Shown here piece by piece: positions 9,884 through 46,257 of a stretch of 64,000 nucleotides of DNA. The notes below the pieces were generated by a model. That model had not been told where the DNA came from and did not search any database. It worked only from the letters and a program-made list of their open reading frames with translations. Within the stretch, counting starts at the first letter, position 1, and each line of letters starts with the position of its first letter. Position numbers and translations under genes: made by a program. The DNA is taken from the IMG/VR virus record IMGVR_UViG_3300028654_000001, positions 1 through 64,000 of that record. One strand, 5' to 3'.

Positions 9884-10112
9884 GATTCACGCTAAGATCA
9901 ACCTCACCTGTCACTGGATGCTCATACCCGACTATCTCTTTACATGTAGAACATATGAGTGTGCAATAAGGTCTAATCTCTAACCTAAGTAAAGACCACC
10001 TCCACCTCTGAACTTGTCCACGTAAGAATGGGTCAAAAGGAGAGGCACCGCAATGAGGACAGCTCTCGATTGGTGAGGGTTTGTCTAGAAGAACAGCGCA
10101 TTCAATCGGCAT
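9813..10112 (-). CDS. Small Zn-ribbon protein
   Basis: CPHCG...CSTC; ATG 10112 lies inside the tag region of the upstream gene. Confidence 0.55.
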   Translation of the reverse strand: MPIECAVLLDKPSPIESCPHCGASPFDPFLRGQVQRWRWSLLRLEIRPYCTLICSTCKEIVGYEHPVTGEVDLSVNPIRLLSRLGGKPPRNPQCSGRSD

Positions 10113-10578
10113 CGTCAAGAACCCTCTCGAATCGAGTTCGGGGTTCAACAATAATCCCGTCAGCGATCAACTCAGCTTTGAATGGAGATCCATAGGGGGT
10201 ACTGATAAGAAACTCCTTCAAGGCCTTCAAGATCCGTACATCATTGTCGATCAAGTTCCCTCGAACGAACACATCACCATTGCCCCTAAACCTCAATACC
10301 TCAATACCCTCGGTGACACAGAAGATGAGATCACCGGGGGCACTGAAAGCTTCTTGTGACTGAATTAGTAAACCCTCTGGAGCAGCTAGTGCCTCCACTT
10401 CCCAGGTATCTGCCAACAAGGCCTCTGCTGTTGGAAACCACCTCTCATTTCGAGAGGCTGAAGCTTCCCATATGAAGTCAGGAGGTTCACTCCGCGTGAG
10501 GCTTATCCAGAACTTATTCGGATCTTGCCGCATGCGGCGCCCAGCTTTTAGATATCCTAGAGCTTGAGAGAAGTTCAT
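10102..10578 (-). CDS. DUF2829 domain protein with C-terminal TRFERVL tag
   Basis: MNFSQALGYLKAGRRMR...WFPTAEALLADTWE; ends EPRTRFERVLDDAD. Confidence 0.8.
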   Translation of the reverse strand: MNFSQALGYLKAGRRMRQDPNKFWISLTRSEPPDFIWEASASRNERWFPTAEALLADTWEVEALAAPEGLLIQSQEAFSAPGDLIFCVTEGIEVLRFRGNGDVFVRGNLIDNDVRILKALKEFLISTPYGSPFKAELIADGIIVEPRTRFERVLDDAD

Positions 10579-11099
10579 GAAGCTAACCTTGAGTACAATG
10601 CATGAAAGAGAGTCTCTATGTACAACCTCTGGTCTTCTGTTACAGCTGGGTACCCGTGCAAATTAACATGCAACCGTACCGCCCGGACCATCTCTAAATC
10701 GGCCCCCCCATTAGGCAATGGCCCAATTTCATCATTTAGTACATTTAGTAATCTCTCACAACCTTCAAGCATCTCTCTGAAGGTTGCTTTCCCACTCGAG
10801 TACTCTTGCCCATACTCCGAACAAGTTCTGCATCTGTGGGGGACTGGTCCGTAGGGCCCCTGACACTGAGGGGCATCTTTAATACAACCTACCTGCAAGG
10901 TTCGTTGTTCTGAAACCTCCCTTGCCTTTGGACCCTCGATTGGACGTCTCCAAAGAACCGTAACACCTATTGTGGTAAGCGTTATCTTGGACTTGTAGAT
11001 CCTCCAATCACCTCCAAGAGGGGGCTCTAACTTCCCCGTTGCTGAATAATACAGGAGATGGTATTCGTAAATGGGCTCTGGCATGGAATCATCAATCAT
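10575..11099 (-). CDS. Hypothetical protein
   Basis: Overlap-coupled within the minus-strand run. Confidence 0.65.
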   Translation of the reverse strand: MIDDSMPEPIYEYHLLYYSATGKLEPPLGGDWRIYKSKITLTTIGVTVLWRRPIEGPKAREVSEQRTLQVGCIKDAPQCQGPYGPVPHRCRTCSEYGQEYSSGKATFREMLEGCERLLNVLNDEIGPLPNGGADLEMVRAVRLHVNLHGYPAVTEDQRLYIETLFHALYSRLAS

Positions 11100-11847
11100 T
11101 CAGGTCACTTAGGTCAAGTTTCAGATCTTCGTTTAGTGGGTTTGGAGGTGGGGTAGTAGGGCGAGGGACTTCCTCAAATGGGTTCGTTGGGAGTTGCCAA
11201 TCAATTGGGGCGAGGTCTTTCCGAAGCAATGCTTGATTGGTTCTTGAGAAGTGTCTGCAGCCATAGAATCCTTGATAGGCTCCTAGGGGTGATGGGTGGG
11301 ATGATGCTAGCACTACATGGTGTTCTGTACTGATCATCTCGGCTTTTGACTTTGCATCGTTTCCCCACAACAGAAATACGATCCTCTTCTCTCGAGCGGC
11401 CAAGACCTTGATCACCCTACTAGTAAAGGTCTCCCACCCTAACTTGCGATGAGATCCAGGCTCTCCTTGACGGACAGTTAGTACGGTGTTCAACAAGAAC
11501 ACCCCTTGTTTAGCCCAAGCCATCAAGTACCCGTGGTCGACTGGCTTCACTCCGAGGTCGTCTCGAAGCTCCTTGTAGATCCCGCGCAGTGATGGTGGGG
11601 GGTTTACCTTGGGGAGGACTGAGAACGCCAACCCATGAGCTTGACCTGGACCGTGATATGGATCCTGACCCAAGATCACTACAGAAACCTCGTCGAGTGG
11701 AGTCATATCAAAAGCTGTGAACACCTTCCCAACAGGCGGGTAAATGACAGACTTTTCTCGTTCAGCTTTGATGAAGGAAGTCAACTCAATGAAGTATGAC
11801 TTCCTCATCTCATCAGAGAGAGCTTCAATCCAGGACTCGTGCATCAC
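11092..11847 (-). CDS. ung: Uracil-DNA glycosylase, family 1
   Basis: ILGQDPYH, GLAFSV, LLNTVLTV and HPSPL motifs. Confidence 0.97.
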   Translation of the reverse strand: MMHESWIEALSDEMRKSYFIELTSFIKAEREKSVIYPPVGKVFTAFDMTPLDEVSVVILGQDPYHGPGQAHGLAFSVLPKVNPPPSLRGIYKELRDDLGVKPVDHGYLMAWAKQGVFLLNTVLTVRQGEPGSHRKLGWETFTSRVIKVLAAREKRIVFLLWGNDAKSKAEMISTEHHVVLASSHPSPLGAYQGFYGCRHFSRTNQALLRKDLAPIDWQLPTNPFEEVPRPTTPPPNPLNEDLKLDLSDLND

Positions 11848-12125
11848 TAATTCAATCGAGTGTCAGTTGGATTTTCGGGTATGTCAAGAAGCCCTATAGC
11901 GAACTTGTTGAATCGATCACGCTCTTCTTGACCCCTAGTTTGGAGGTGTTGAATGTACTCTTCTTTTATTTTCAGGATGTTTTTGGCAAGACGGGCCTCA
12001 GAGCGGTAGAGCTCTATCTTCTGCCAGATGAACAGTACTGGTACTAATCCGAATAAAACCCCGCATCCTACGAGGAAGACTTGGGCTATACCTGGGGTGA
12101 CCCTCAAGGCCTCATCAAAGTTCAT
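11847..12125 (-). CDS. Small membrane protein
   Basis: Single hydrophobic segment; coupled to ung. Confidence 0.6.
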   Translation of the reverse strand: MNFDEALRVTPGIAQVFLVGCGVLFGLVPVLFIWQKIELYRSEARLAKNILKIKEEYIQHLQTRGQEERDRFNKFAIGLLDIPENPTDTRLN

Positions 12126-12391: not shown

Positions 12392-12417
12392 AGCCTGAGT
12401 ATAGACTACACCGGGTA

Positions 12418-13137: not shown

Positions 13138-14634
13138 ATGACGGTCGAGAGATTCTCCAATCAAGCCTCAACCACATTATTTACCTCTGTAGGTACTGGA
13201 GATCTTAGTATCTCAGTTCAGGCTACAACCAACTTCCCAGGCTCACCCGAGTTCAGGATCAGAATCGGTCAAGAACTCATGTTGGTGACCGGAGTCTCTG
13301 GTACCACTTGGACGGTAACCAGGGGGATTGAAGGAACAACCCCAGCTTCACATGCACCAGGTTCGATCGTCGTAGCGGTACTGACCTCGGGTGCACTTAC
13401 TGAGATGAGGGCTGAGATCGAAGCTGAGATCCCTTCGGGTACAATTCAGACCACTGATCCTCGCCTGGCCGATGATCGAACAGCTTCAGGAATCCGAACA
13501 GAAACAACCGTTGTAGCTATCTCTTCAGCAACAGCACCTACTCCTGGACAAGTCCTGACTGCTACGAGTGGAACTGCTGCTGACTGGAAGACCGTACCGA
13601 CACCACCAACCATCACTAGCCATGGTTCTGCAGCAGCCGGTGATGTTGTTCGACTCGTCTCTGCCGAAGTCCTTGCTCAGGCCCTGGCTGACTCTACTAG
13701 TCATGCTTCCTCGCTAATTGGTGTGTGGAATGGTGTTACTCCAGTTTCATTCTCTACTCAGCCTGTTGTAAATTTTGATTCTTCCCCAATCGTTGGAGCC
13801 CCATGTTATGTTTCAGCATCCGTTGCAGGAGCATTAACCTGCACAATCCCTGGCGTAGGCTACGTTAGTGTACCGCAGGACTTGTTGGTACTCGAAGATA
13901 AGTCTGTTGGGACAGCTTACGCAGCCAGGGTTGGGATCAATAAAGCTATGACAGGATCTCTGTCGGCTCGTGATGATTTCAAGCGCTATGCAGCACAACT
14001 AACTGGAATGAACCTAGCCAAGGCTGAGTTTTTTGGAAGTGACTTTACCGCAAGTGAACTACAAGATACTGGTACTGGTCCGATGCTCCCTCTTACATTT
14101 GGAACGTGGACTCAGCCGTGCCTACCCAGTTCTCAATATTCTAGTATTTATACGAACACAGCTGGAACAGTATTGTCCGTCAAAAAAGTTCTACCTGCTG
14201 CAAATCTAGCAACACAGAAGTGGGCAATGAGTGTGCGCTTTAGACAAGATGTTGCTGGCTACGAATTGATCCTTGCTCTTCGCCGAGCGAATGTCGATGG
14301 GGTAACTTTCACGGAGACTGCCCAAGTTGGCTTCAGTGCGTACGTAGGACATTCAACTCAACTCCTCTTTGGTGCTGGTAACTTTGACCCAGCCGACGGG
14401 GTATGGGATGTTAGGACTCCGACTGCTGCATACGGTACAATTGGCGTAACTTGGCATCAAGGCGTGATGTACTCGAAGGGTGATGGCAACATTTATTGTA
14501 ATTTAGATAATGCTGGGGTACTGTCTTTGCCGATAGCTCCATCGGCGGCTACAGGAATGGTGGAGCTCTGGTGCAATACCAACAGCCTGCAAATGGATTG
14601 GCTGTACCTGGTCAACGAGAGAGTGGACTACTAA
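13138..14634 (+). CDS. Tail fibre / receptor-binding protein paralogue 1
   Basis: N-terminal ~97 aa shared with 19699 and 61132 (ERFxNQAST...PEFRIRIGQELML...VTRGxEGTT); Thr/Ser/Gly-rich beta C-terminus. Confidence 0.75.
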   Translation: MTVERFSNQASTTLFTSVGTGDLSISVQATTNFPGSPEFRIRIGQELMLVTGVSGTTWTVTRGIEGTTPASHAPGSIVVAVLTSGALTEMRAEIEAEIPSGTIQTTDPRLADDRTASGIRTETTVVAISSATAPTPGQVLTATSGTAADWKTVPTPPTITSHGSAAAGDVVRLVSAEVLAQALADSTSHASSLIGVWNGVTPVSFSTQPVVNFDSSPIVGAPCYVSASVAGALTCTIPGVGYVSVPQDLLVLEDKSVGTAYAARVGINKAMTGSLSARDDFKRYAAQLTGMNLAKAEFFGSDFTASELQDTGTGPMLPLTFGTWTQPCLPSSQYSSIYTNTAGTVLSVKKVLPAANLATQKWAMSVRFRQDVAGYELILALRRANVDGVTFTETAQVGFSAYVGHSTQLLFGAGNFDPADGVWDVRTPTAAYGTIGVTWHQGVMYSKGDGNIYCNLDNAGVLSLPIAPSAATGMVELWCNTNSLQMDWLYLVNERVDY

Positions 14635-16660: not shown

Positions 16661-17533
16661 TTACTCGGTGAGCAGATCTAGTTGGTTGGATCTTACACCG
16701 GGTGTCGGATCCAACCTCTTTTGAGCCAAAGAGATGGCAACCGGGTTCTGGTCAATACCCACCCAATCACGTCCTAGGTTCTGTGCTGCCACCAGTGTTG
16801 TACCAGATCCGCACATTGGATCAAGAATACGCCCGCCAGGATTGGTGCCCAGTCGAACAACCCTATCCAGCAACTTCAAAGGCTTTTGAGTTGGGTATCC
16901 GGTGGACTCCGAGTTCAAGGGAGTGTTGGCCTTCATCGCCGAGCAATCAGTCCAAACACTCCCCATCCGGCGCCCCTTGTCTTCGTAGTACCGATAGGCC
17001 TTCCCATTGATGACTCGTTCCCGGTACCGCCTCCCTGACTCGTCGACGGACTTGAAGTGCATGTTCCGGCTGGTCTCGGCATACGGCTCTCGAACCTCTG
17101 GGTCATCCGAGTTGTAGGTGAACTCATCCCCGCGGGAGTAGACCAGGATCGTTTGGTGGGTGACACTCAGGCCCTTCTTGCCTCGAGCCCCATTCCCGGG
17201 AACCCAAATGATCTCCCCTCGAAAGTTTGGCTTGCCAAAGATATCATCCGCCAGAAGTTTGGCTTCGTGAACCCCCCTGAAGTCCAAGTGGAGCCACAAG
17301 CTACCATTGGGGTTGAGGGCAGAGTGAAGAACCCTCAACCGTGGCTCTAGCATCGAGCAGAAGCCCTCGATACCACCCCAGGAGTCTTGGTACATCACAT
17401 CACCATCCACACGTGCCCCAAAGCCACTACGAGCCGAGTGTGAGTATCCAGTATTGAATGGGGGATCAACGTAAATGAGGTCGAACAGACCCACCTTTGG
17501 AACCAGATCCAGGCAGTCACCATGGTACAACAT
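16661..17533 (-). CDS. DNA adenine methyltransferase, beta class
   Basis: IYVDPPF, YPTQKP and DPMCGSGTT motifs. Confidence 0.93.
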   Translation of the reverse strand: MLYHGDCLDLVPKVGLFDLIYVDPPFNTGYSHSARSGFGARVDGDVMYQDSWGGIEGFCSMLEPRLRVLHSALNPNGSLWLHLDFRGVHEAKLLADDIFGKPNFRGEIIWVPGNGARGKKGLSVTHQTILVYSRGDEFTYNSDDPEVREPYAETSRNMHFKSVDESGRRYRERVINGKAYRYYEDKGRRMGSVWTDCSAMKANTPLNSESTGYPTQKPLKLLDRVVRLGTNPGGRILDPMCGSGTTLVAAQNLGRDWVGIDQNPVAISLAQKRLDPTPGVRSNQLDLLTE

Positions 17534-18024
17534 CAGATCACGTCTTTACGTTCGAATCGAGTCGGGACTTTGGCGTGCACTCGAGCCTCATATTCTTCCT
17601 TGTCATGAATCTGTCTTCGAGTCTGCACAGCTATCGCTGTAGTAGCCCCCTCCTCATCCCATAAGCTCTCGAGCTGGGAAACCTCCTCTTCTGGAGAGAG
17701 ATGGTTTGCACGAATAACTTCTCTATCCCAATCATTGAAGGAAACTGGTGGGGGTTGAGGAGCCCCTTTATTCAGTTCATTCACCAGCTGCATCCTACCC
17801 GCCAAACTTCTGAGTGAGTTCCAAAGTGGGTCATCTTGTTCGATAGTGGCTAGGAGTGATCGAAGGGCTATTACCCAAATTGTTTCAGTATTGGTACAAT
17901 CGGAACAAGCAAATCCAATAGTGCGATCCCTCGGATCATCACAACAGTACACAGAATGCCTGGTCTCCTGCACATGTTGGCGGGCTGCTTGGAACAACTC
18001 AGGGAAGTTTGGATACTCTGGCAC
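17533..18024 (-). CDS. CxxC protein with C-terminal PTRFER tag; paralogue of 18032..18454
   Basis: ARQHVQE..H...DD...IGFACSDC core; ends KVPTRFERKDVI. Confidence 0.75.
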   Translation of the reverse strand: MPEYPNFPELFQAARQHVQETRHSVYCCDDPRDRTIGFACSDCTNTETIWVIALRSLLATIEQDDPLWNSLRSLAGRMQLVNELNKGAPQPPPVSFNDWDREVIRANHLSPEEEVSQLESLWDEEGATTAIAVQTRRQIHDKEEYEARVHAKVPTRFERKDVI

Positions 18025-27382: not shown

Positions 27383-27892
27383 ATGACTCTAGACTTAATC
27401 TCCCGCGCACGTGAGTTATCTGAAGAGAATCGTAGGAAAACCCAAGAGGAGAGGGACCAGAAGTTGCGTGAACAGAAGGCTTTGGATAACCAACTCAAAG
27501 CCCTCTCCAGTCTAGTTTTGGTTGAGTTGGAGAAGATTAGCGGCCAGGAGACCAAACACGGAGTGATACAACTTACGCCCAACAACTCTCGTTCTCATAT
27601 AGTATTTGCCTATCTGGAAGTTGGGGCCAAGAAAATGGCTTGGTTCAAGGCTTACATTGAGAGCGGGACCTGGGACCCTTCGGATGACATCCGGAACGAA
27701 CCCTATACGGTTGTCAAGATTAAGTGCAGGTTTTACCCACCAAGTCCAACTCGAAACTTCGATGATGTCTGGGACGTTGAGGAAGTGAGGGAGAAGCTCA
27801 ACGGGGGTTGGGAGCTTACCTGCACGAATGAACAAGAACGGGTCACTCAATTCTTCGAGAACCTAGCTAAGTGCCTTTCATCCTGGATTTAG
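27383..27892 (+). CDS. Hypothetical protein
   Basis: Start moved to ATG 27383, 10 nt after CGGTGTA (27366-27372). Confidence 0.7.
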   Translation: MTLDLISRARELSEENRRKTQEERDQKLREQKALDNQLKALSSLVLVELEKISGQETKHGVIQLTPNNSRSHIVFAYLEVGAKKMAWFKAYIESGTWDPSDDIRNEPYTVVKIKCRFYPPSPTRNFDDVWDVEEVREKLNGGWELTCTNEQERVTQFFENLAKCLSSWI

Positions 27893-28497: not shown

Positions 28498-29108
28498 CAG
28501 AGCTTGATCTCGGGAACCATCTTGTTGGCCGTCCACTGATAAAGACCACTGAGTCGATCAAAGAAGAAGTTGACCAGTCTACGAATCGGACTATCCAGAA
28601 GAGTTCCGACAAGAGACGCTGGCCACCAGAGGCCCCAAGCTACGATCATTGCCTTGTACTCCTTGGCCTGAGGAGTATTCGAGAGATAGCCCCTCTTGTA
28701 ATTAACATTACCTAAGCTTCTGGTTATACTGTCAACAGTCAGGCCATTAGGGTAGTTCTCAGGTCTATCCTCCAGGTTCTTCTTATATTCTGCGATCTTC
28801 TTGTCGCGAGCAGTTCTGAAGTCCCATAGGTAGAACACCCACTTCCCGTATGACCAGACAATGGTTCCGGCCAAGTAGTACCCAACATACCGAAGAACCA
28901 TCCAAAAGTTATCTCGACTGAACAACTCACTGACTTTAGGCCACTTGAAGAAGTGTCCCAATATAGAGTAGCTGATTACGCTAAGGATCACCAAAGTGGT
29001 AGAGTACCCGAACTTTTCCAACTGAATCAAAAAGATCAGGGTTACGAACAAACCAACTTCGGCGGTCAACACCCACGGTAATAGCCAGAACATAAACGGC
29101 TCATACAC
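28497..29108 (-). CDS. Membrane protein
   Basis: Three to four hydrophobic segments; coupled to the NT5C gene. Confidence 0.7.
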   Translation of the reverse strand: MYEPFMFWLLPWVLTAEVGLFVTLIFLIQLEKFGYSTTLVILSVISYSILGHFFKWPKVSELFSRDNFWMVLRYVGYYLAGTIVWSYGKWVFYLWDFRTARDKKIAEYKKNLEDRPENYPNGLTVDSITRSLGNVNYKRGYLSNTPQAKEYKAMIVAWGLWWPASLVGTLLDSPIRRLVNFFFDRLSGLYQWTANKMVPEIKL

Positions 29109-29553: not shown

Positions 29554-30003
29554 GTGCTCCTTCGCATCTATCAACTCCAAGATGACACGGAACCTTGGTT
29601 CCAGAAATCTGCAAAGGTTCCTCTCATAATCATAGCCAAAACCATGAGTGGTACTTTCAGTATTTCGTTACCTGAGCGTGCCAAAGTCCCACGAGACTCT
29701 ATAGGAGTGACTCCCGGGGAGCCCCCTTATGAAACCGCCAAGAGATCTATTCTTGAAAAAGCTCGAGAGATTTGGTCTTGTGTCAAAAAGAAGGGGTATT
29801 CGGATACTGGGTACTTCTATGGTACCTTCAATCCAACACATCAGTTGTCAACTCAAAGTAAGGGTATTGTTGGTAGCATAGGAATTTGCTACTGCCCACA
29901 GGAAGCAACACCTGGCTTCACCAGTGTATCCATAGAGGATATCGAATTTGAGGAGGAACCAAAGTTAGTCCCTACCAGGTTCGAACGTGAGGACGTGATC
30001 TGA
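29554..30003 (+). CDS. Hypothetical protein with C-terminal tag
   Basis: Ends LVPTRFEREDVI. Confidence 0.7.
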   Translation: MLLRIYQLQDDTEPWFQKSAKVPLIIIAKTMSGTFSISLPERAKVPRDSIGVTPGEPPYETAKRSILEKAREIWSCVKKKGYSDTGYFYGTFNPTHQLSTQSKGIVGSIGICYCPQEATPGFTSVSIEDIEFEEEPKLVPTRFEREDVI

Positions 30004-30516
30004 GTGCCCGATGAAGAACTTCCCCAGGCGTACGTCAAAGAGGTCGACGGTCAACTTGTCTTGATTGACCCAGTTGCAGCCGGAGTCCTCCAAGCTATCA
30101 ATCAGTACAACGGTAGTAACTGCAGGCATACCCTAGAGATTCAGTTAGAACGGGTGGTTCACTTCACTCGCAGGATTAGAGAACTTAGGAAGAACCCTGC
30201 CGAGGTTACCATTGTACTCCTCAACGTGAATGACCCCTGGGGAGGCGCCATGGCAGAGATTCTGATGCCTGGCCATGACTGGAAACCCTATCGAGACCGA
30301 GGGGAGGTGCCCTTCGCTCGAGGGTTAGCCGGTCGCGAGGGGTTGCAGGGTGTCTTAGACGAAATAGACCCGAAAGAGGGAGCCAAGCTCCGTGAAGCGG
30401 GTCCAGTGGTTACCGTGGTCGTAATGGATCACGGAGTAGTAGAAGTCTTCAAGAAAGGTGACTGGGAGGACGACTACATTCCAACTCGTTTAGAGAGGGT
30501 TGCTGACTCAGAGTAA
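30004..30516 (+). CDS. Hypothetical protein with C-terminal tag
   Basis: Ends YIPTRLERVADSE. Confidence 0.75.
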   Translation: MPDEELPQAYVKEVDGQLVLIDPVAAGVLQAINQYNGSNCRHTLEIQLERVVHFTRRIRELRKNPAEVTIVLLNVNDPWGGAMAEILMPGHDWKPYRDRGEVPFARGLAGREGLQGVLDEIDPKEGAKLREAGPVVTVVVMDHGVVEVFKKGDWEDDYIPTRLERVADSE

Positions 30517-30528: not shown

Positions 30529-30747
30529 ATGAGAGTATTCTGTAACAACTGCGCGTGTTCCCCACCAATAGGACTATACACTTGCCTTAAGGAGCACCCT
30601 ATTGTCTACGCAGGGTTAATGGATCCGGAGACCAAGAAGTTCAATAGACTAATGATTAGTGCGGATAGTAATGAGTGCCCTGACTTCGTGGACATGGTGA
30701 ATAGGCCAACCAGGTTTGAGAGAATCCTCGACGATGACATCCTGTAA
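30529..30747 (+). CDS. Cys/His Zn-binding family member with tag
   Basis: CNNC...CLKEH...CPD...PTRFERILDDDIL. Confidence 0.75.
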   Translation: MRVFCNNCACSPPIGLYTCLKEHPIVYAGLMDPETKKFNRLMISADSNECPDFVDMVNRPTRFERILDDDIL

Positions 30748-30955
30748 CTACTGCGCCAACATCACTGGAAGAGGGGGAAAACCTAAGTGCCTCAAGGGTC
30801 ATCTCCTAAGGTCCACCCCAGTGTTTGTAGGGGAGTTAAGAACTGAGTTCCTGAACGTGCTAAGGTATGAGCCTGAGCCCTGTCCAGATATGGAATTCCG
30901 CCGTCTCTATCGACCAACACGCTTCGAAAAGATCCTCTATGACCCCGTCTTGTGA
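30734..30955 (+). CDS. Cys/His Zn-binding family member with tag
   Basis: MTSCNYC...CLKGH...CPD...PTRFEKIL; start moved to 30734. Confidence 0.75.
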   Translation: MTSCNYCANITGRGGKPKCLKGHLLRSTPVFVGELRTEFLNVLRYEPEPCPDMEFRRLYRPTRFEKILYDPVL

Positions 30956-31169
30956 TCGATGTACCAAGAAACCTGCACATCCATCGGCAAGAAAACTGGC
31001 AGTTCAGTTCAGGGTACCTACGGTTTGTTCTAGGGGGCACGCGTTAGTGACCAGTAAGTTTACTCATACCTTCCTTCGAGTCATTGGAGAAGATATTGCT
31101 CCCTGTCCAGATTTCGAATTTGATGCCCCAAGACTAACTAGGTTTGAACGAATACTTAGAGAAGAATGA
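30939..31169 (+). CDS. Cys/His Zn-binding family member with tag
   Basis: MTPSCDRC...CSRGH...CPD...LTRFERIL; start moved to 30939. Confidence 0.75.
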   Translation: MTPSCDRCTKKPAHPSARKLAVQFRVPTVCSRGHALVTSKFTHTFLRVIGEDIAPCPDFEFDAPRLTRFERILREE

Positions 31170-31411
31170 GCACCATCTGCAACGATTGTGAGTACTTCCA
31201 TAAGTTAGGATCTGACGTCCTTGGGAGACTAGCACCACGAAAGTGGATCTGCGTGATGGTCCATCCAATAACACCCCTTCAAAAAGTCAGTAGGTCCTCT
31301 GAGGATCCACCGAAGTTCACCTACAAGAACGGTGATACTTGCAAGGAATATCGGTACGGTGGCCCGAGGCCGTCTCGACTCGAGAGGGTGGTTAGGGTTG
31401 ATATTCTGTGA
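31166..31411 (+). CDS. Cys/His Zn-binding family member with tag
   Basis: CNDC...CVMVH...CKE...PSRLERVV. Confidence 0.75.
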   Translation: MSTICNDCEYFHKLGSDVLGRLAPRKWICVMVHPITPLQKVSRSSEDPPKFTYKNGDTCKEYRYGGPRPSRLERVVRVDIL

Positions 31412-31691
31412 TGATTGCCAGCACCACCCGCGCGTGTGGGGAGACTTCAACCCAGAGACAAGGGAGTGGTCTGGGATCTGTATGTGCGGGTGGAGAGTGC
31501 TAACCATCCTGTATATGGGCTCGGAACCCATCAAGAGAACTATAGCAAAGGGGAAGTTCACTAGTCCGACGGTGCGCCAAGACTATGATGACTGCAAGGA
31601 CTATGAGTTTGAGGGCCAGCGACTAACTCGGTTTGAAAGGATTCTGCTCCATAACTCATGCTTTCAAAAGTTCAGTGATTCGAACCACTGA
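31398..31691 (+). CDS. Cys Zn-binding family member with tag
   Basis: Probable TTG start; IFCDDC...CMCG...CKD...LTRFERIL. Confidence 0.7.
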   Translation: MIFCDDCQHHPRVWGDFNPETREWSGICMCGWRVLTILYMGSEPIKRTIAKGKFTSPTVRQDYDDCKDYEFEGQRLTRFERILLHNSCFQKFSDSNH

Positions 31692-31792: not shown

Positions 31793-31993
31793 CTAGATCT
31801 CTCGATCAGGACAATCGTCACAGTCCTTGCGAATCAAACCAGGATGCTTTAATTGAGGGACAGATCTCCCGTTCATCCTAAGAGCCCGTACCGAGTGGCC
31901 CTTGTCGCAAGTAATGACTAACTCGTTTCGATAGACTGGTTCAGCATTCTCTTGCGGTGGGAGGTTCTTGCATTCATCACAAAGTTTCAGCAT
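31793..31993 (-). CDS. Cys/His Zn-binding family member lacking the tag
   Basis: MLKLCDEC...CDKGH...CPDREI. Confidence 0.7.
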   Translation of the reverse strand: MLKLCDECKNLPPQENAEPVYRNELVITCDKGHSVRALRMNGRSVPQLKHPGLIRKDCDDCPDREI

Positions 31994-32204
31994 TGAGGAT
32001 CCTCTCAAATCTAGTTGGATGTTCCGTGATATCCCTCTCCAAGCAAACTGAGGCATTTCGAACCAGACGAAGCTTAACTTTATGTCCTCCCGGGTTGATG
32101 TTGGTATACTTTATGAGGTGCCCACGTGAGCACATAGCTTCCCAGTCGCCCACGGTAACATCAGGAGGAGTGGGGCGCCACTTGCAGTTAGAGCAAAAGA
32201 TCAT
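31977..32204 (-). CDS. Cys/His Zn-binding family member with tag
   Basis: CSNC...CSRGH...CLE...PTRFERIL. Confidence 0.75.
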   Translation of the reverse strand: MIFCSNCKWRPTPPDVTVGDWEAMCSRGHLIKYTNINPGGHKVKLRLVRNASVCLERDITEHPTRFERILNAETL

Positions 32205-32607
32205 TCAAAACCCTCTCGAATCTGGTTGGGTGTGTCCCGTTATCATAGTCTGAACAGAAGTCTGAATTCTCGCGAATCAAACTTTTTAGAGGAGCATCAT
32301 AGAAGTAGTCTTGGGCTGCCAATAACTGATGCCCTTTATCACAGGCTAGAGAACGATTTCTGTGGAGTCTTTCAGTCAAAGGCGGCGGGGCCCACTTACA
32401 ATCGGTACAGAGGATCATTCTTGCACCACCCCCTTCAATATCTGGGCAAGGTGCTTGCCCAACAGGGTGTAGCCCAACACCAGAGGAGTTCTTACTAGCC
32501 CAAATTCTATGACGTTTTGCACAATCACCACGCCACTGATCTATATCGTAATCATCTAACCTAGGCCTACATAGAACGTGTTTGCACCCATTACAGATGG
32601 TATACAT
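32188..32607 (-). CDS. Tandem fusion of two Cys/His units with tag
   Basis: MYTICNGC...CAKRH...CPD then MILCTDC...CDKGH...CSD...PTRFERVL; GGTGTA 11 nt before ATG 32607. Confidence 0.75.
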   Translation of the reverse strand: MYTICNGCKHVLCRPRLDDYDIDQWRGDCAKRHRIWASKNSSGVGLHPVGQAPCPDIEGGGARMILCTDCKWAPPPLTERLHRNRSLACDKGHQLLAAQDYFYDAPLKSLIRENSDFCSDYDNGTHPTRFERVLNDLLL

Positions 32608-32688
32608 CAATTTTAGGATACACCAGAACAATGCGAATCGGTGTAACTTACTGATGAACCTGACAATTCAACTAAGAAGTGCAGCCTA

Positions 32689-34438: not shown

Positions 34439-34551
34439 TTCATAGATTATTACACGTGAGGGGTTTCAATCTCACCAATAAATCGACATTAGTACTGTTT
34501 TTTGGCCAATGGTTTTGTACTGATTCGGCCAGTTATGGTGTACATTCCACT

Positions 34552-34812
34552 ATGGTCACCAACTGCCTCCATTGTATCCATTGTCCTCAGGTCGATGATT
34601 CTGAGGACTTACGCGGGGGTTGGGCTGTCTGCAAGAAAGGGTTTGATGTTCAATATTGGACTAGACCCAAAATACCATCCGGGGGATCTGGGTTAAAACA
34701 CATGTCTGTCGTAAGGGATGGATCCGACTGCCCACTTTATGATACTGGGGAGTATGAAGGCCCAAGACCCTCCCGCCTCGATAAAATCCTGCAAGATGGC
34801 TACCCTCTGTGA
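34552..34812 (+). CDS. Cys Zn-binding family member with tag
   Basis: MVTNCLHC...CKKG...CPLY...PSRLDKILQDGYPL; GGTGTA 9 nt upstream. Confidence 0.75.
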   Translation: MVTNCLHCIHCPQVDDSEDLRGGWAVCKKGFDVQYWTRPKIPSGGSGLKHMSVVRDGSDCPLYDTGEYEGPRPSRLDKILQDGYPL

Positions 34813-35018
34813 CCAGTGTCCCCCACAGGCCCCCCTTGATCGACGGTAGAGATCGATGCAATAAAGGTCATCCAGTTGTAGTGGTTAGAGTATACGAACC
34901 TGAAGGCTCAAAGTTTTCCAAGAGAGTTCTGCACCGAGATGACACAGATGAGGTCTGTTCTGATTTCCCACACGCGACAAGGTTTGAGAGAATCCTCCGA
35001 GATGGCTACCCTTTGTAG
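34809..35018 (+). CDS. Family member lacking the first CxxC, with tag
   Basis: CNKGH...CSD...ATRFERILRDGYPL. Confidence 0.7.
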   Translation: MTSVPHRPPLIDGRDRCNKGHPVVVVRVYEPEGSKFSKRVLHRDDTDEVCSDFPHATRFERILRDGYPL

Positions 35019-36242: not shown

Positions 36243-36740
36243 TCAGGGAGCAGGGTGAACTACCCTAAATCCTACATTCTCGCTGTAGTAACCGTTTGAT
36301 TCCCCAAACCATCGAACGGTTACCGTACCACGAACCGTAGAAAATCGGTAGAAAGTCCAAGTATAGCTTTCAGGTTGGTAGTCAAGATATGGATCTGGCT
36401 CAGAAGACAGTTCTTCAGCTTCGACTATCGGGTACCCGATTAGATCACTCAAGTCACCAATGATGTCTTCGATCTTCACGCTCTCACAGCAATCCTGCTG
36501 ATGATAGAGCTCGAAGCGAGTCCCATTTGTGGTAACGAACACCAGGGCCTCCTCACCAACACTTCCGATCACCTCCCTCAGGGTGATCCCAACCATGTCG
36601 CTAAGCTCCTCTGGGAGTCGATCTGGAGTTTGAAGATAGGAAGGGAGTTGAGCTCGCGGTGACTGCGGTTCAGATTCAATCTCTCTCTTAGGTCGCAAAC
36701 CCTCCCAGAATGATTCGATGTCGTCCAGGTCATTTGGCAT
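36243..36740 (-). CDS. Common phage domain (HxQDCCESV, DUF7448-like) with N-terminal acidic-Trp tag
   Basis: MPNDLDDIESFWEGLRP, then HQQDCCESVKIEDIIGDL...TWTFY...WFGESNGYYSE. Confidence 0.8.
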   Translation of the reverse strand: MPNDLDDIESFWEGLRPKREIESEPQSPRAQLPSYLQTPDRLPEELSDMVGITLREVIGSVGEEALVFVTTNGTRFELYHQQDCCESVKIEDIIGDLSDLIGYPIVEAEELSSEPDPYLDYQPESYTWTFYRFSTVRGTVTVRWFGESNGYYSENVGFRVVHPAP

Positions 36741-38926: not shown

Positions 38927-39139
38927 TCATACAAGGTCGTCTTTGAGAACTCTCTCTAATCGGGTAAGTCTCTGCCCAGTATCATGATCTGGGCAGGACT
39001 CATCATCGGCTCTCGCCGCTATCCCTTTCTCACCGGTCTTACGATTCACCGGTTGAATAAGAGTGTACCCACGATTACAGGCTAATCCAAGCTTGGTGTG
39101 CTCGGAGCTCCACTTGCACTCGCTACACGATAATCTCAC
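38927..39139 (-). CDS. Cys Zn-binding family member with tag
   Basis: GTG 39139; SCSEC...CNRG...CPD...LTRLERVL. Confidence 0.7.
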   Translation of the reverse strand: MRLSCSECKWSSEHTKLGLACNRGYTLIQPVNRKTGEKGIAARADDESCPDHDTGQRLTRLERVLKDDLV

Positions 39140-39500
39140 CCTGAAGGATCCTTTCAAATCGAGTTGGATACAGGGTCTCAGCCTCTTCCTCGCGCTCAAC
39201 AAAACCTGGACGGCAGTAGGATAACTGAAGGAAGCCACCCTCTGGCGTAGTATATATGATCTTCCAATCATACAAGTTAAGGTGATCTATATTTACAATC
39301 CACTCAAGGCAGTACTTCATCAGGAAGTAGGGATCTTCTCTGACCCAAGCCAACCTAGGCCACTTAACAACGGCGCTCGTAAGCTCATTCTTCAGAGCAT
39401 GAACGAACTCAGAGATCCCAGCCCCAAGCCCGTTAACCTTGAATAGAGGGTGACCCGAATCGTCTTCCGAGACTGCTACGAGAAGTTCCTTGTAACTCAC
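39123..39500 (-). CDS. Hypothetical protein with C-terminal tag
   Basis: Ends LYPTRFERILQGEIIV. Confidence 0.7.
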   Translation of the reverse strand: MSYKELLVAVSEDDSGHPLFKVNGLGAGISEFVHALKNELTSAVVKWPRLAWVREDPYFLMKYCLEWIVNIDHLNLYDWKIIYTTPEGGFLQLSYCRPGFVEREEEAETLYPTRFERILQGEIIV

Positions 39501-39745
39501 AGGACAACCCCACTCAAGATCCTATCAAACCTCGTGGGCCTAATATCTAGTTTGTCACCACAAATCTCGCTGTGGGTCATGCTGAGCACCCTTGGAACCT
39601 CTTGTGTTGCCTTATCGGGAATCCATATGTAGAACACATAATGCCCCTTGCAACAGGGGGCATACCCGGAGTAGTAAGTTGGGTCATCCTCCACGTGAAA
39701 CTTATGTGAACAATCCATGCAGTTGGTCAGAGCCATAGGCATCAC
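39497..39745 (-). CDS. Cys/His Zn-binding family member with tag
   Basis: CMDC...CCKGH...CGD...PTRFDRIL. Confidence 0.75.
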   Translation of the reverse strand: MMPMALTNCMDCSHKFHVEDDPTYYSGYAPCCKGHYVFYIWIPDKATQEVPRVLSMTHSEICGDKLDIRPTRFDRILSGVVL

Positions 39746-44099: not shown

Positions 44100-44167
44100 A
44101 GCCTTCGGGTATTTTTAGGGGCATTGATCTTGAACTTACTATTTCTCATGTAATACTACGTTTCAGG

Positions 44168-44422
44168 TCAGGTAATTTCACCAAGCCCAAGATCTAAACA
44201 GAAAGTCGTTGCACTGGCCTCCCTAGTCTCCAGGATCTCCAACTGCTCTTGGGTCAGGGATACCGCCCGGAGATCAACCTTGACGCCAAACGGCGCCAAA
44301 GCATTCTGGGCCGTCCAGATAGCATCCTGTTCGGTACTGTCCCAGCCATGGACAGCCCATCGCTTACCCAAGATCATGTTACCGTCGATGTGGAGGATCT
44401 CTCTGCCGATTGCTGCGAACAT
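44168..44422 (-). CDS. Hypothetical protein
   Basis: AGGA before ATG. Confidence 0.55.
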   Translation of the reverse strand: MFAAIGREILHIDGNMILGKRWAVHGWDSTEQDAIWTAQNALAPFGVKVDLRAVSLTQEQLEILETREASATTFCLDLGLGEIT

Positions 44423-44573
44423 TACATCCTATTGTACTACATATTGGGGGATCTACTCAACTAAGTTAGTCAATCACCAGAGAATAGTCTATCGAGCCGA
44501 GTTTGATCACAGCACCACTGAATATTCTCCTGGTTCTTATTGGACACGGAGCCTGGAAGTATCTAGTTTAGGA

Positions 44574-44972
44574 CTACTCCATGGCCTTATCAATCCACGA
44601 GTAGTCCTCTTCTTGCTTAGGTTCAGGCCCTTCAAGAGTCAACAAGAGGTCTGACTCTACATCTTCTATCGACTTTGGCTTAAGGGACTCTTCAATCCAC
44701 GAGTAGTCATCATACTCATCCTCTGGAAGATCCTTTATGGTTAGGACCTGGATGGCTAACTTAACAGCTATATCAATAGGACTCAGGCCCTCAACTTCTG
44801 CCACTACACGAATATAGTCGAAAAAGTCGAAGTAGAACTCGCTACCCCACCTAAAGCCAGGTTTGTGACCAGCACTTGCTAACCTAACCAGAAGTCGACT
44901 AATCCACTTGGTAACGGTCTCGTTTCCGAACCTCTTAGCAAGTTGAGTCCTTGAAGTTCCTGGTCTAGTCAT
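44574..44972 (-). CDS. Hypothetical protein with duplicated DYSWI motif
   Basis: DDYSWIEES and EDYSWIDKA. Confidence 0.65.
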   Translation of the reverse strand: MTRPGTSRTQLAKRFGNETVTKWISRLLVRLASAGHKPGFRWGSEFYFDFFDYIRVVAEVEGLSPIDIAVKLAIQVLTIKDLPEDEYDDYSWIEESLKPKSIEDVESDLLLTLEGPEPKQEEDYSWIDKAME

Positions 44973-45165
44973 GTAGGATCCGTTCGAATCGAGTCAAGTG
45001 CACAAGTGGTCGGTACCGGGCACACTTGAAAACCTCAGCCGTGGAGGTCCAATGACGAAGACCCTCCAAGCAAACTAATTCCCACCACGGGCGATCCCCC
45101 GAGGGGAATGGCGACGGTGGGTTCACATTACTCAGGCATGATTCGCAGAGGTTGGAGTCAGTCAC
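44965..45165 (-). CDS. Cys Zn-binding family member with tag
   Basis: GTG 45165; CESC...CLEG...C...LTRFERILHD. Confidence 0.7.
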   Translation of the reverse strand: MTDSNLCESCLSNVNPPSPFPSGDRPWWELVCLEGLRHWTSTAEVFKCARYRPLVHLTRFERILHD

Positions 45166-45475
45166 CGGAGAGAATTCGTTCGAATCGAGTTGGGTAGGTC
45201 TCTTCGACTTTAGAGTATTCGTCCCGAAAGTCAACGCAGCGGCCATTCTCTACCGGAACTAAGTGGGCTCGCATCTCATGGTTGCCAACCCTCAGTGTGA
45301 TCTTGGCCACATGGTTAGCCTTGCAGGTAACTCGGTACATCTCAACCGCTGTCTTTGGGCGATGAGTTCTGAGAGTCGGATCAAGTGGCACCATAAACTC
45401 AGTTGATCTAGGAAAAACCCTATCCTTGTACAGATAGTCATCCGGGCAATGGTTGCAGTAGTTACAGATTGGCAT
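45158..45475 (-). CDS. Cys/His Zn-binding family member with tag
   Basis: CNYC...CKANH...CVD...PTRFERILSGD. Confidence 0.75.
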   Translation of the reverse strand: MPICNYCNHCPDDYLYKDRVFPRSTEFMVPLDPTLRTHRPKTAVEMYRVTCKANHVAKITLRVGNHEMRAHLVPVENGRCVDFRDEYSKVEETYPTRFERILSGD

Positions 45476-45748
45476 TCAGATCCAAGATTCAATTGCTGGC
45501 AGATCCTGGGTACTTGGCTCAGCCAGGCATACCCGCCCTGGAGGGATAAGCTTCCTCGCTTCCTCCAAGGTATTAGTCAGTTGGTAGTCTACATGCATAT
45601 ATACCTTCTCATTCAACGCTGTTGACTCACGCACTACATAGTTCTCAGGGAAGTCGAATGGGTGCTTGTAGATCGTGAGGACACTAAGACCTTTAGACAT
45701 ATCCAAGTCTTGAATTATATTGGTGCTTTCTAGAACTACTCTAGTCAT
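45476..45748 (-). CDS. Hypothetical phage protein
   Basis: TIYKHPFDFPENYVVR...TLEEARKLIP...IESWI. Confidence 0.7.
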   Translation of the reverse strand: MTRVVLESTNIIQDLDMSKGLSVLTIYKHPFDFPENYVVRESTALNEKVYMHVDYQLTNTLEEARKLIPPGRVCLAEPSTQDLPAIESWI

Positions 45749-46257
45749 TATGTCCTAGAGGAATCGTCATCGAGAACCCTCTCGAACCGAGTTGGCCGTG
45801 GTCCTCTGTAGGACGCTGGCTTGGCATCAACACCTATCGGACCATGTTCTCGAACCAACTCACCTTCCAAATCAACCTCTCGAATGACCACATATGGTAG
45901 AAGTCGACTCAGGTCCCCCAGACTATTCCTTGCAAGCTCACGAACGTTTTCCGTGAGAAGTGGACTATCAGGACTGAGCAGAGCGAACTCAATCGTGGGG
46001 TTTACCTGGCCGGCACTGGCCTCAATTCGTAAATCTTGAATAAGACTTACTTGGTTTCCATTCGAGTAGACCTTAGTATTCTGAACCGACAAGGGTCTAT
46101 CGCCCTCATCACTCTCGGGGTGTGTCCTTTCAGATGTAATCACCAATGCGTCTTCACTTAGAATGACCACTTGATGAAGTCGGTTTGGCCACGAGGCATC
46201 TGTTCTACGCTGTATAATGAATACCCTATCGAACTCCCCCACTTCGATCGTTGGCAT
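45748..46257 (-). CDS. Hypothetical protein with C-terminal tag
   Basis: Ends GPRPTRFERVLDDDSSRT. Confidence 0.7.
   Translation of the reverse strand: MPTIEVGEFDRVFIIQRRTDASWPNRLHQVVILSEDALVITSERTHPESDEGDRPLSVQNTKVYSNGNQVSLIQDLRIEASAGQVNPTIEFALLSPDSPLLTENVRELARNSLGDLSRLLPYVVIREVDLEGELVREHGPIGVDAKPASYRGPRPTRFERVLDDDSSRT

What the first reader, a model, noticed from the sequence alone, without database searches (positions are those of the whole stretch)
10102..46257. A C-terminal PTRFERIL peptide tag on 19 otherwise unrelated proteins: candidate addressing/docking system
Seen: 19 ORFs have [PLRA]-[TS]-R-[FL]-[ED]-[RK]-[IV]-[LVA] (two copies read PTRFER[KE]DVI) at or very near the C-terminus. 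Their left coordinates are 10102, 17533, 29554, 30004, 30529, 30734, 30939, 31166, 31398, 31977, 32188, 34552, 34809, 38927, 39123, 39497, 44965, 45158 and 45748. The bodies differ: a DUF2829 domain (the second DUF2829 gene at 9346 has no tag), a Cys/His zinc family and several unrelated folds. The DNA varies synonymously (CCA ACC AGG TTT GAG AGA ATC; CCA ACA CGC TTC GAA AAG ATC; CTA ACT CGG TTT GAA AGG ATT; CCT ACC AGG TTC GAA CGT), so selection acts on the peptide and this is not a DNA repeat. Inference: a portable amphipathic short linear motif that docks many phage proteins on one hub, such as a phage or host AAA+ ATPase/protease adaptor, polymerase, or compartment-import or packaging factor. 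I do not recognise it as a described motif.
Basis: partly seen in the sequence, partly recalled or inferred. Interest (0 to 1): 0.92.

Follow-up and report, generated by a model that had tools for sequence, protein, structure and literature searches.

The report
Shared C-terminal address tag, huge phage
About one gene in six in this stretch of a 512-kb phage genome ends in the same short peptide (PTRFERIL or PTRFEREDVI) on otherwise unrelated proteins; this looks like an undescribed protein address or docking tag whose receptor is still unknown.

Summary
All 19 ORFs carry the motif 9-15 residues before the stop (one has 21). Shuffled proteins give 0.04 such C-terminal hits, and no called gene has an internal copy. 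The window is the first 64 kb of a 512,571-bp IMG/VR phage contig.

In about 60 fetched loci from this huge-phage group I found 162 distinct tagged ORFs, forming 93 BLAST clusters of bodies. At least 53 lie in this genome. Seven more lie in small mobile-element-like islands of a deltaproteobacterial MAG.

There are two tag forms:
- A: PTRFER[IV]L plus a short acidic tail.
- B: PTRFER[ED][DP]V[IV], always exactly at the C-terminus.

Homologous bodies can carry either form.

Selection acts on the peptide. Homologous pairs are 49% identical in the body and 90% in PTRFER. Tag codons show 280 synonymous and 60 non-synonymous differences.

Thirteen of the 19 window genes are paralogues of one small zinc-binding family, so independent bodies in the window number about seven, not 19. 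One body has a Tad2 (anti-Thoeris) fold. Some tagged proteins are membrane-anchored with the tag predicted to face the cytoplasm.

Best reading: a portable C-terminal docking peptide for one cytoplasmic receptor. The receptor was not identified. No Pfam, NCBIfam or literature match exists.

The parts
10102..10578 (-). Tagged gene, 158 aa. N-terminal Tad2-like domain, an extra domain, then tag RTRFERVLDDAD (type A).
   Evidence: Pfam Tad2-like, E 1.7e-4, below the curated cut-off; eight orthologues keep the tag unchanged apart from one V[LI] and one [DE] position. Foldseek top 24 hits are Tad2/AcrIIA7.
17533..18024 (-). Tagged gene, 163 aa, type B tag PTRFERKDVI at the exact C-terminus.
   Evidence: cluster 1: homologues in other contigs end in PTRFER[DE]DVI.
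29554..30003 (+). Tagged gene, 149 aa, type B tag PTRFEREDVI at the exact C-terminus.
   Evidence: the L005 orthologue keeps it. cluster 0.
30004..30516 (+). Tagged gene, 170 aa, non-zinc body, tag PTRLERVADSE.
   Evidence: the L005 orthologue has the same tag; no similarity to the other bodies.
30529..30747 (+). Zinc-family member, 72 aa, tag PTRFERILDDDIL.
   Evidence: AF2 mean pLDDT 59, tag modelled as helix 62-69.
30734..30955 (+). Zinc-family member (longest ORF starts at 30716), tag PTRFEKILYDPVL.
   Evidence: orthologues P0012 and P0018.
30939..31169 (+). Zinc-family member (longest ORF starts at 30867), tag LTRFERILREE.
31166..31411 (+). Zinc-family member, 81 aa, tag PSRLERVVRVDIL.
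   Evidence: P0005 and P0009.
31398..31691 (+). Zinc-family member (longest ORF starts at 31332), tag LTRFERIL followed by an unusual 14-aa extension.
   Evidence: orthologues P0003 and P0008 stop 3 residues after IL.
31977..32204 (-). Zinc-family member, 75 aa, tag PTRFERILNAETL.
32188..32631 (-). Protein with two tandem zinc modules, 147 aa, tag PTRFERVLNDLLL.
34552..34812 (+). Zinc-family member (longest ORF starts at 34456), tag PSRLDKILQDGYPL.
   Evidence: P0007 and P0010.
34809..35018 (+). Zinc-family relative that lacks the N-terminal CxxC, 69 aa, tag ATRFERILRDGYPL.
38927..39271 (-). Zinc-family member, tag LTRLERVLKDDLV. The longest ORF overlaps the upstream gene, so the true start is probably further in.
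39123..39500 (-). Tagged gene, 125 aa, non-zinc body, tag PTRFERILQGEIIV.
   Evidence: singleton cluster.
39497..39745 (-). Zinc-family member, 82 aa, tag PTRFDRILSGVVL.
44965..45246 (-). Zinc-family-like gene, tag LTRFERILHD. The longest ORF overlaps the upstream gene.
   Evidence: cluster 10 (L010 homologues).
45158..45475 (-). Zinc-family member, 105 aa, tag PTRFERILSGD.
   Evidence: P0013, P0015, P0016 and P0017, some from contigs of 303 and 510 kb.
45748..46257 (-). Tagged gene, 169 aa, non-zinc body, tag PTRFERVLDDDSSRT.
   Evidence: homologue L058:4432-4881 has the body but no tag.
44473..44505 (-). Possible decayed twentieth tag (QTRLDRLFSGD, then a stop) in a 30-codon ORF downstream of, and out of frame with, gene 44574..44972.
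   Evidence: Not verified further.

Best explanation
The peptide is a modular C-terminal docking tag, a short linear motif.

Anatomy:
- A Pro- and Glu-rich linker (Lys-rich as well before form B) comes first.
- The invariant core Pro-Thr-Arg-Phe-Glu-Arg follows.
- Form A continues with Ile/Val-Leu and a 3-8 residue acidic tail.
- Form B continues with two acidic or Pro residues and Val-Ile as the very last residues.

Proposed mechanism (inferred): the core forms a short helix, with Thr as N-cap and Phe plus the Ile/Leu pair as the hydrophobic face. This helix plugs into one common receptor in the cytoplasm of the infected cell. It thereby brings dozens of otherwise unrelated phage proteins, soluble and membrane-anchored, to the same place or machine.

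Among the sub-variants I favour recruitment of clients to a common assembly hub or factory (about 0.35). Next come hand-over to an AAA+ unfoldase or protease (about 0.2), docking on a host machine (about 0.15), and loading into the capsid (about 0.12).

Shown here: terminal position, modularity, peptide-level selection, spread across a phage clade, and predicted cytoplasmic orientation. Inferred only: the helix, the existence of a single receptor, and its identity.
For: - Position: 131 of 139 distinct [TS]RFER hits in six-frame translations of about 459 kb of related phage DNA lie within 25 residues of a stop, and 67 lie exactly 9 residues from it. The window has 19 C-terminal hits against 0.044 expected, and none internal.
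- Modularity: 162 tagged ORFs of 48-386 aa form 93 BLAST clusters. Of 46 bodies scanned against Pfam, 36 of them also against PHROGs, only one weak RecA/KaiC-like hit and one DUF6794 hit appeared. One body has a Tad2 fold.
- Interchangeable forms: one body family carries either tag form (cluster 2). A homologue of window gene 45748 lacks the tag. One MAG protein carries both forms in tandem.
- Selection: across 98 homologous pairs, bodies are 49% identical and PTRFER is 90% identical, with 280 synonymous and 60 non-synonymous codon differences. The tag is the most conserved stretch of the Tad2-like protein in 9 orthologues.
- Linker and tail composition fit an exposed motif. AF2 models the tag as a short helix detached from the fold, at low confidence.
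- Predicted cytoplasmic orientation: tagged membrane proteins have an uncharged N-terminus, a transmembrane segment, and then a Lys/Arg-rich stretch.
- Shared use: tags also occur in small islands of a bacterial MAG, one with a VapE primase-helicase and one with an integrase. Only the tag and linker resemble the phage proteins there.
Against: - No receptor was found.
- AF2 confidence for the tag is low (pLDDT about 30 and 67), so the helix is not established.
- No binding, localisation or stability data exist.
- The only candidate noticed is a classic-clade AAA ATPase conserved next to tagged genes. It also occurs in huge phages with no tags in 21 kb around it, and its pore loop lacks the usual aromatic residue.
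- Thirteen of the 19 window examples share descent, so the window alone gives only about seven independent bodies.
- The sub-variant probabilities are judgement, not measurement.
Confidence: 0.7

Rival explanations
1. Capsid-loading signal. The tag binds the inside of the procapsid or its scaffold, so tagged proteins are packaged and ejected into the next host. This would resemble encapsulin cargo-loading peptides or the T4 capsid targeting sequence.
For: - Many small ORFan proteins occur in tandem arrays.
- Giant phage heads are known to hold more than 50 gene products, including ejected proteins (PMC10052503, found).
- Two tagged bodies hit head-decoration, virion-structural or major-head PHROGs weakly (E 4e-6 and 4e-8 over 57-100 residues).
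- Tags occur in satellite-like islands with a VapE primase-helicase. Such elements could exploit a helper phage's capsid.
Against: - Several tagged proteins are integral membrane proteins whose tag is predicted to face the cytoplasm.
- About 16% of window genes are tagged, among methylase, nucleotide-metabolism and tRNA-repair genes rather than in a visible head module.
- A Tad2-type sponge works stoichiometrically, so it gains little from a few packaged copies (inference).
- No capsid, scaffold or protease gene was seen next to tags.
Confidence: 0.12
2. Degron or adaptor tether. The tag hands its bearer to an AAA+ unfoldase or protease, phage- or host-encoded, either to clear early proteins on schedule or to deliver bound host targets.
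For: - Form B needs the free C-terminus, as ssrA-type and similar tags do.
- A classic-clade AAA ATPase of about 400 aa (best PDB matches Cdc48/p97) is conserved in synteny with tagged genes in five loci.
- Both membrane and soluble clients exist, as for FtsH-type proteases (established knowledge of FtsH).
- The diversified paralogous zinc family fits a variable binder with a constant tether.
Against: - The AAA has no protease domain, and it has Leu where pore-loop aromatics normally sit.
- Homologues occur in phages without nearby tags.
- The tag matches no known degron consensus.
- Tandem double tags are not expected for a degron.
Confidence: 0.2
3. Mimic of a host hub ligand. The tag docks on a conserved host protein such as a replisome, transcription, division or chaperone component, and different mobile elements of that host have converged on it or exchanged it.
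For: - The same tag occurs in huge phages and in small chromosomal islands of a deltaproteobacterial MAG, on bodies that are otherwise unrelated.
- An acidic tail plus terminal hydrophobic residues recalls the C-terminal tip of bacterial SSB (own knowledge; a lead only).
Against: - No ordinary chromosomal protein with the tag was seen in the 24 kb of MAG DNA read.
- A scan of 185,579 species' genomes with the form-B pattern gave C-terminal hits only in that one MAG.
- It is hard to see why about one gene in six should bind the same host protein.
Confidence: 0.15
4. Common descent. All tagged proteins are diverged members of one family, and the motif is simply its conserved C-terminal element.
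For: - Thirteen of the 19 window genes do belong to one zinc-binding family.
- 61 of the 162 tagged ORFs have CxxC and at least four Cys.
Against: - Bodies range from 48 to 386 aa in 93 BLAST clusters.
- They include a Tad2 fold, a P-loop ATPase, DUF6794 and multi-pass membrane proteins.
- Similarity between MAG and phage proteins is confined to the tag and linker.
Confidence: 0.03
5. Nucleic-acid element. The conserved stretch is a DNA or RNA signal at gene ends (repeat, terminator, recombination site) that happens to be translated.
For: It recurs at the 3' ends of genes on both strands.
Against: - All six Arg codons and all synonymous Phe, Glu and Thr codons are used.
- 48% of tag codons differ synonymously between homologues while the peptide stays 90% identical.
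- There is no Rfam match in the window.
- The frame and the distance to the stop are fixed.
Confidence: 0.01

Closest known systems
Encapsulin cargo-loading (targeting) peptides
   Same: A short conserved peptide at the extreme C-terminus, behind a flexible linker, on unrelated cargo proteins. It docks on one receptor. That receptor, the encapsulin shell, shares the HK97 fold with tailed-phage capsids (own knowledge).
   Different: The consensus is different: there is no Gly-Ser-Leu type motif. No shell gene was seen next to the tagged genes. Some tagged proteins are membrane proteins. The number of clients is far larger.
Phage T4 capsid targeting sequence of internal proteins
   Same: It is a phage-encoded address peptide shared by several unrelated proteins (own knowledge; giant-phage context in PMC5694885 and PMC10052503).
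   Different: The T4 signal is N-terminal, about 10 residues long, sits on a handful of proteins and is removed by the prohead protease. This tag is C-terminal, and more than 50 tagged proteins were seen in one genome.
Tethering and degradation tags of AAA+ machines (ssrA tag with SspB and ClpX, the SspB C-terminal ClpX-binding peptide, ESCRT-III MIM helices binding the Vps4 MIT domain)
   Same: C-terminal peptides or helices on many clients or adaptors bind one AAA+ N-domain. Form B depends on the free C-terminus. An AAA ATPase gene lies among the tagged genes.
   Different: The tag matches none of these consensus sequences. The neighbouring AAA is not specific to tag-bearing phages. No protease partner was seen.
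Hub-binding peptides of the replisome (beta-clamp-binding motif, PIP box, SSB C-terminal tip, T4 gp45-binding tails)
   Same: A short terminal motif on many unrelated proteins converges on one hub. The acidic tail with terminal hydrophobic residues recalls the SSB tip.
   Different: There is no Gln-Leu-x-Leu-Phe type pattern. Few of the tagged bodies look like DNA enzymes, and the recognisable DNA enzymes in the window (two methylases and a UDG) are untagged.
Organelle and compartment address signals read at the C-terminus (PTS1 with Pex5, bacterial microcompartment encapsulation helices, Hsp70/Hsp90 EEVD with TPR domains)
   Same: The code is terminal and portable, and is read by one receptor domain. 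Form B (Glu-Asp-Val-Ile at the free end) resembles these in depending on the free end.
   Different: No compartment, TPR receptor or shell is known or seen for this phage. The conserved core PTRFER has no counterpart in those signals.

Membership tests
Encapsulin cargo-loading peptide | Conserved peptide at the extreme C-terminus behind a flexible linker | tested here: met
   the motif lies 9-15 residues from the stop, and the linker is enriched in Pro and Glu.
Encapsulin cargo-loading peptide | Gly/Ser/Leu-rich consensus of known targeting peptides | tested here: not met
   the position-by-position counts give P-T-R-F-E-R and nothing resembling that consensus. The consensus itself is recalled from my own knowledge.
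Encapsulin cargo-loading peptide | Shell (encapsulin) gene in the same operon or genome | tested here: inconclusive
   None appeared among about 70 proteins scanned, but only about a third of the 512-kb genome was seen.
T4-type capsid targeting sequence | N-terminal position, removed by the prohead protease | tested here: not met
   The tag is C-terminal in every case. Cleavage cannot be tested with these tools.
Sortase/exosortase-type C-terminal sorting signals (LPXTG, PEP-CTERM and similar) | Motif followed by a hydrophobic transmembrane helix and a basic cluster | tested here: not met
   the tails after the motif are mostly 3-8 residues long and acidic; no hydrophobic segment at any C-terminus.
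ssrA-like ClpX degron | Non-polar last three residues (Leu-Ala-Ala type) with a free carboxylate | tested here: inconclusive
   Form B always ends in Val-Ile/Val. Form A ends variably, often in acidic residues.
Bacterial beta-clamp-binding motif | Gln-Leu-[Ser/Asp]-Leu-Phe type pentapeptide | tested here: not met
   no Gln is conserved and the hydrophobic pattern differs.
Tad2 (anti-Thoeris sponge) family, for gene 10102..10578 only | Tad2 / DUF2829 fold | tested here: met
   N-domain pLDDT is 71-85. The top 24 PDB matches are Tad2 or AcrIIA7 (probability 1.0, TM 0.5-0.74 relative to the target). The Pfam hit is below the curated cut-off (22.5 against 25 bits), but three orthologues carry PF11195.
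Tad2 (anti-Thoeris sponge) family, for gene 10102..10578 only | Ligand-binding residues and tetramer formation | not tested
   I made no residue-level comparison.
Single homologous protein family (tag as a family signature) | All bodies alignable to one profile or fold | tested here: not met

The most novel reading that the evidence does not exclude
A clade of huge phages runs a proteome-scale addressing system. A C-terminal code in two interchangeable forms, on roughly one protein in six, sorts soluble and membrane-anchored phage proteins to a phage-built assembly or compartment in the infected cell. Small mobile elements of the same host carry the code as well, so they can plug into it.
Probability: 0.3. 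Interest if true: 0.95.

Novelty: new variant of a known kind. Interest (0 to 1): 0.86.

Why it matters
Portable terminal address peptides are known: signal peptides, encapsulin and microcompartment targeting peptides, degrons, and the T4 capsid targeting sequence. I know of none in a phage that marks dozens of unrelated proteins per genome, and the searched literature holds none.

If one receptor reads this tag, three things follow:
- It would expose how a 0.5-Mb phage organises or times a large part of its proteome.
- It would give a sequence handle that groups more than 90 families of function-unknown proteins into one pathway.
- It would provide a ready-made tag for directing foreign proteins to that pathway.

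The presence of the tag in chromosomal islands of a deltaproteobacterial MAG also gives a candidate host. It hints at satellite-helper or host-hub relations that can be tested.

Tried and rejected
- DNA similarity to GenBank phages: none.
- Literature search for the peptide strings: nothing relevant. Concept searches returned only general giant-phage papers.
- NCBIfam and Pfam on tagged proteins: no family covers the tag.
- PHROGs and Pfam on 36 further tagged bodies: one DUF6794 hit only.
- Alignment-driven locus searches failed until the alignment was reduced to sequences with invariant PTRFERIL.
- Profile search of the form-B tail against 1.84 billion proteins: only 7 hits at E up to 0.001, all already known or close relatives. 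A profile with about 11 informative columns lacks power at that database size.
- AAA ATPase as receptor: it is syntenic with tags in five loci. However, homologues in L083 and L084 have no tags nearby, so it is not supported as a specific partner.
- T4-type late promoter: TATAAATA is nearly absent and no clear intergenic motif emerged, so expression timing could not be inferred.
- AF2 of a zinc-family member was too poor (pLDDT 59) for a fold search.
- tRNA and Rfam scans of the window: nothing.
- Rejected readings: secretion or sorting signal (acidic tail, no transmembrane segment after the motif), DNA repeat, and single family.

Full report
**1. Observation**

The motif starts 9-15 residues before the stop in 18 of them. 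In 31398..31691 a 14-residue extension follows the tag, and orthologues lack that extension. In a set of 118 called genes there are 19 C-terminal hits and no internal ones. In 2000 per-protein shuffles the means were 0.044 C-terminal and 0.215 internal hits. All six Arg codons and both Phe and Glu codons are used at the conserved positions. The signal is therefore in the peptide.

**2. Correction to the count**

Thirteen of the 19 are paralogues of one small zinc-binding family: CxxC, then CxxGH, then CxD[FY], then about 6-10 residues, then the tag. Gene 32188 holds two such modules. The other six bodies (10102, 17533, 29554, 30004, 39123, 45748) show no significant similarity to each other or to the zinc family once the tag is removed. 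On its own the window gives about seven independent bodies.

**3. Origin and spread**

The window is the first 64 kb of IMGVR_UViG_3300028654_000001, also recorded as Ga0265322_10000002, a 512,571-bp contig. It has no DNA match among GenBank phages. It carries phage genes: a tail-fibre-like N-terminus, methyltransferases, and a protein shared with T4-like and jumbo phages.

Degenerate DNA patterns for the tag, scanned over IMG/VR, hit almost only this contig and a few others from samples 3300037067, 3300037088, 3300037089 and 3300035208. Those contigs measure 228,619, 145,487, 71,488, 39,619 and 33,933 bp, plus shorter ones. All 31 hits of the form-B pattern fall in this group. A JGI metagenome scan added contigs from Ga0172379-81 that are syntenic with window positions 29.5-35 kb and keep the tags. 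Protein searches found orthologues on ENA/Logan contigs of 510,324 and 303,644 bp.

The loci fetched hold 162 distinct tagged ORFs. At least 53 are in the 512-kb genome and 38 in the 228-kb contig. Four lie just past the window end, at about 64.1-65.1 kb (L027).

**4. Anatomy of the tag**

There are two forms:
- Form A (97 cases): usually Arg/Pro/Tyr/His, then Pro-Thr-Arg-Phe-Glu-Arg-[Ile/Val]-Leu-x-[Asp/Glu]-[Asp/Glu]. The stop usually comes 10-13 residues after the Thr. The tail often ends in two hydrophobic residues.
- Form B (62 cases): Pro-Thr-Arg-Phe-Glu-Arg-[Glu/Asp]-[Asp/Pro/Glu]-Val-[Ile/Val], always the last residues of the protein.

Of 139 distinct [TS]RFER hits in all six frames of about 459 kb of these loci, 131 lie within 25 residues of a stop and 67 lie exactly 9 residues from it. 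The 20 residues before the tag are enriched in Pro and Glu, and also Lys before form B. One body family carries either form (cluster 2), so the forms are interchangeable. A more distant huge phage (L082, a 454-kb NCBI contig) has variants such as PTRFERPELV, PTRFEREYLL and KTRFKRTPLV.

**5. Bodies**

With tags removed, the 162 ORFs (48-386 aa, median 127) form 93 BLAST clusters.
- Pfam on the ten largest gave only one weak RecA/KaiC/DnaB-like P-loop hit.
- For 36 further representatives, PHROGs gave nothing and Pfam gave one DUF6794 hit.
- Window gene 10102 has an N-terminal Tad2 fold. The AF2 N-domain has pLDDT 71-85, and the top 24 PDB matches are Tad2 or AcrIIA7. An extra domain and the tag follow. 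Eight orthologues at 65-83% identity keep the tag almost unchanged.
- Recognisable enzymes near tagged genes are untagged: methylases, UDG, CCA-adding enzyme, a Thg1-like enzyme, a kinase-like P-loop protein and an RNA ligase.
- Several tagged proteins are membrane proteins, for example L061:3211-3960, L061:3960-5006 and their L037 and L039 homologues. They have an uncharged N-terminus, a transmembrane segment and then a Lys/Arg-rich stretch. By the positive-inside rule this places the C-terminal domain and the tag in the cytoplasm.

**6. Selection**

In 98 homologous pairs with 20-90% body identity, bodies are 49% identical and the PTRFER core is 90% identical. Of 588 tag codons compared, 280 differ synonymously and 60 non-synonymously. 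Homologues that lack a tag are rare. One clean case exists: L058:4432-4881, a relative of window gene 45748. A few others carry decayed tags such as PIRFTRIL and PTRFEHLF. The tag is therefore modular and under strong purifying selection.

**7. Tags outside phages**

A scan of one genome from each of 185,579 species with the form-B pattern gave 18 stretches, about the chance level. Three of them are contigs of one MAG, "uncultured delta proteobacterium MFD01476.bin.3.99". These hold seven C-terminal tags.

The context is a bacterial chromosome (HflX, YebC, ArgJ, sulfatase) with small islands. One island has a VapE-like primase-helicase downstream of three tagged genes. Another has an integrase next to a 377-aa protein that carries a form-A-like copy and, 25 residues later, a terminal form-B copy. 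Only the tag and linker resemble the phage proteins. This points to a candidate host lineage. It also shows that unrelated mobile elements share the code, either as satellites of the huge phages or because the receptor belongs to the host.

**8. Receptor search**

A classic-clade AAA ATPase of about 400 aa (best PDB matches Cdc48/p97) lies inside a conserved block of tagged genes in L035, L021, L023 and L048. A 45%-identical copy lies near tagged genes in L036. It has a poly-acidic tail, no protease domain, and Leu where the pore-loop aromatic residue normally sits. Homologues are common on huge-phage contigs of 200-510 kb. Of three more distant ones read, L082 has tags nearby, but L083 and L084 have none in 21 kb each. 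At this window's tag density about 12 would be expected across those two loci. The ATPase is therefore not a specific marker of the tag system, and the receptor remains unidentified.

**9. Structure**

AF2 models the tag as a short helix: residues 62-69 in the 72-aa zinc protein and residues 150-155 in the Tad2-like protein. It is not packed on the body, but confidence is low. The sequence fits a helix with Thr as N-cap and Phe, Ile/Val and Leu on one face. This is inference, not a result.

**10. Interpretation**

The data fit a portable C-terminal docking peptide read by one cytoplasmic receptor (confidence about 0.7).
- Recruitment to a common hub or factory is my preferred sub-variant. It explains soluble plus membrane-anchored clients, tandem tags and use by other mobile elements.
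- An AAA+/protease tether, a host-hub mimic and capsid loading remain open. Capsid loading is weakened by the membrane-anchored clients and by the genomic setting.
- Common descent and a nucleic-acid element are effectively excluded.

**11. Novelty**

No Pfam, NCBIfam or PHROG family covers the tag, and no paper in the searchable library contains the peptide strings. In kind it belongs with terminal address or docking peptides. In sequence, scale (about 16% of window genes, more than 50 per genome) and setting (huge phages plus host islands) it is new.

Noticed in passing
window 46741-50285 (-): The phage carries an ABC importer-like operon: an ATPase (46741-47553), a BPD_transp_1 permease (47557-48459) and a 525-aa protein that joins an NMT1/phosphonate-type substrate-binding domain to a C-terminal OmpA domain.
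   Followed up: partly
window 52397-53152 (-), with small ORFs at 52177-52410 and 53149-53391: There is a ThiF/E1-like adenylyltransferase (Pfam E 1e-72) flanked by ORFs of 77 and 80 aa. This could be a ubiquitin-like or sulfur-carrier system. I did not examine the small ORFs.
   Followed up: no
window 50312-51349 (-): This 345-aa protein has a weak PspA/IM30 (bacterial ESCRT-III-like) match, E 3e-4 and below the curated cut-off.
   Followed up: no
window 3-261: A 42-bp tandem repeat (about 4-6 copies, 93% matches) lies at the very start of the contig. It could be a coding repeat or an assembly-end feature.
   Followed up: no
window 4473-5765 (-), 16661-17533 (-), 11092-11847 (-), 27889-28536 (-): These are two N6/N4 DNA methyltransferases, a UDG-superfamily protein and an NT5C-like nucleotidase, all untagged. 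Methylase 16661-17533 abuts tagged gene 17533-18024.
   Followed up: partly
window 13138-14634 (+) and 19699-22167 (+): One protein has a tail-fibre-like N-terminus, and an 822-aa protein has a right-handed beta-helix of the tailspike or depolymerase kind. Both lie among the accessory genes.
   Followed up: no
window 31398-31691 (+): This tag is followed by a 14-residue extension that orthologues P0003 and P0008 lack. This looks like a shifted stop codon in this genome.
   Followed up: partly
L035:7122-8321 (+), L036:6367-7557 (+), and homologues in L021, L023, L048: This classic-clade AAA ATPase has an unknown N-domain of about 190 residues and, in L035, a poly-Asp/Glu tail. It is widespread on huge-phage contigs of 200-510 kb.
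   Followed up: partly
L061:1847-5009 and L037:1651-5416: A conserved block holds a CCA-adding enzyme followed by two or three membrane proteins, all ending in form-B tags.
   Followed up: partly
L080 (MAG contig CAWEUH010000027, 141584-161844): This is a chromosomal island of roughly 9 kb. It holds three tagged small genes, an untagged Cys-rich protein, a 387-aa protein and a VapE-like primase-helicase. FRG and Hypoth_Ymh genes typical of defence islands lie next to it.
   Followed up: partly
L056:3612-4376, L056:4705-5172, L036:11471-12412: Thg1-like tRNA-His guanylyltransferase, a kinase-like P-loop protein and an Rnl2-type RNA ligase form a tRNA or RNA repair set. They are interleaved with tagged genes.
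   Followed up: no
window 36243-36740 (-): This protein carries DUF7448 (E 2e-25). It is untagged and lies between tagged clusters.
   Followed up: no
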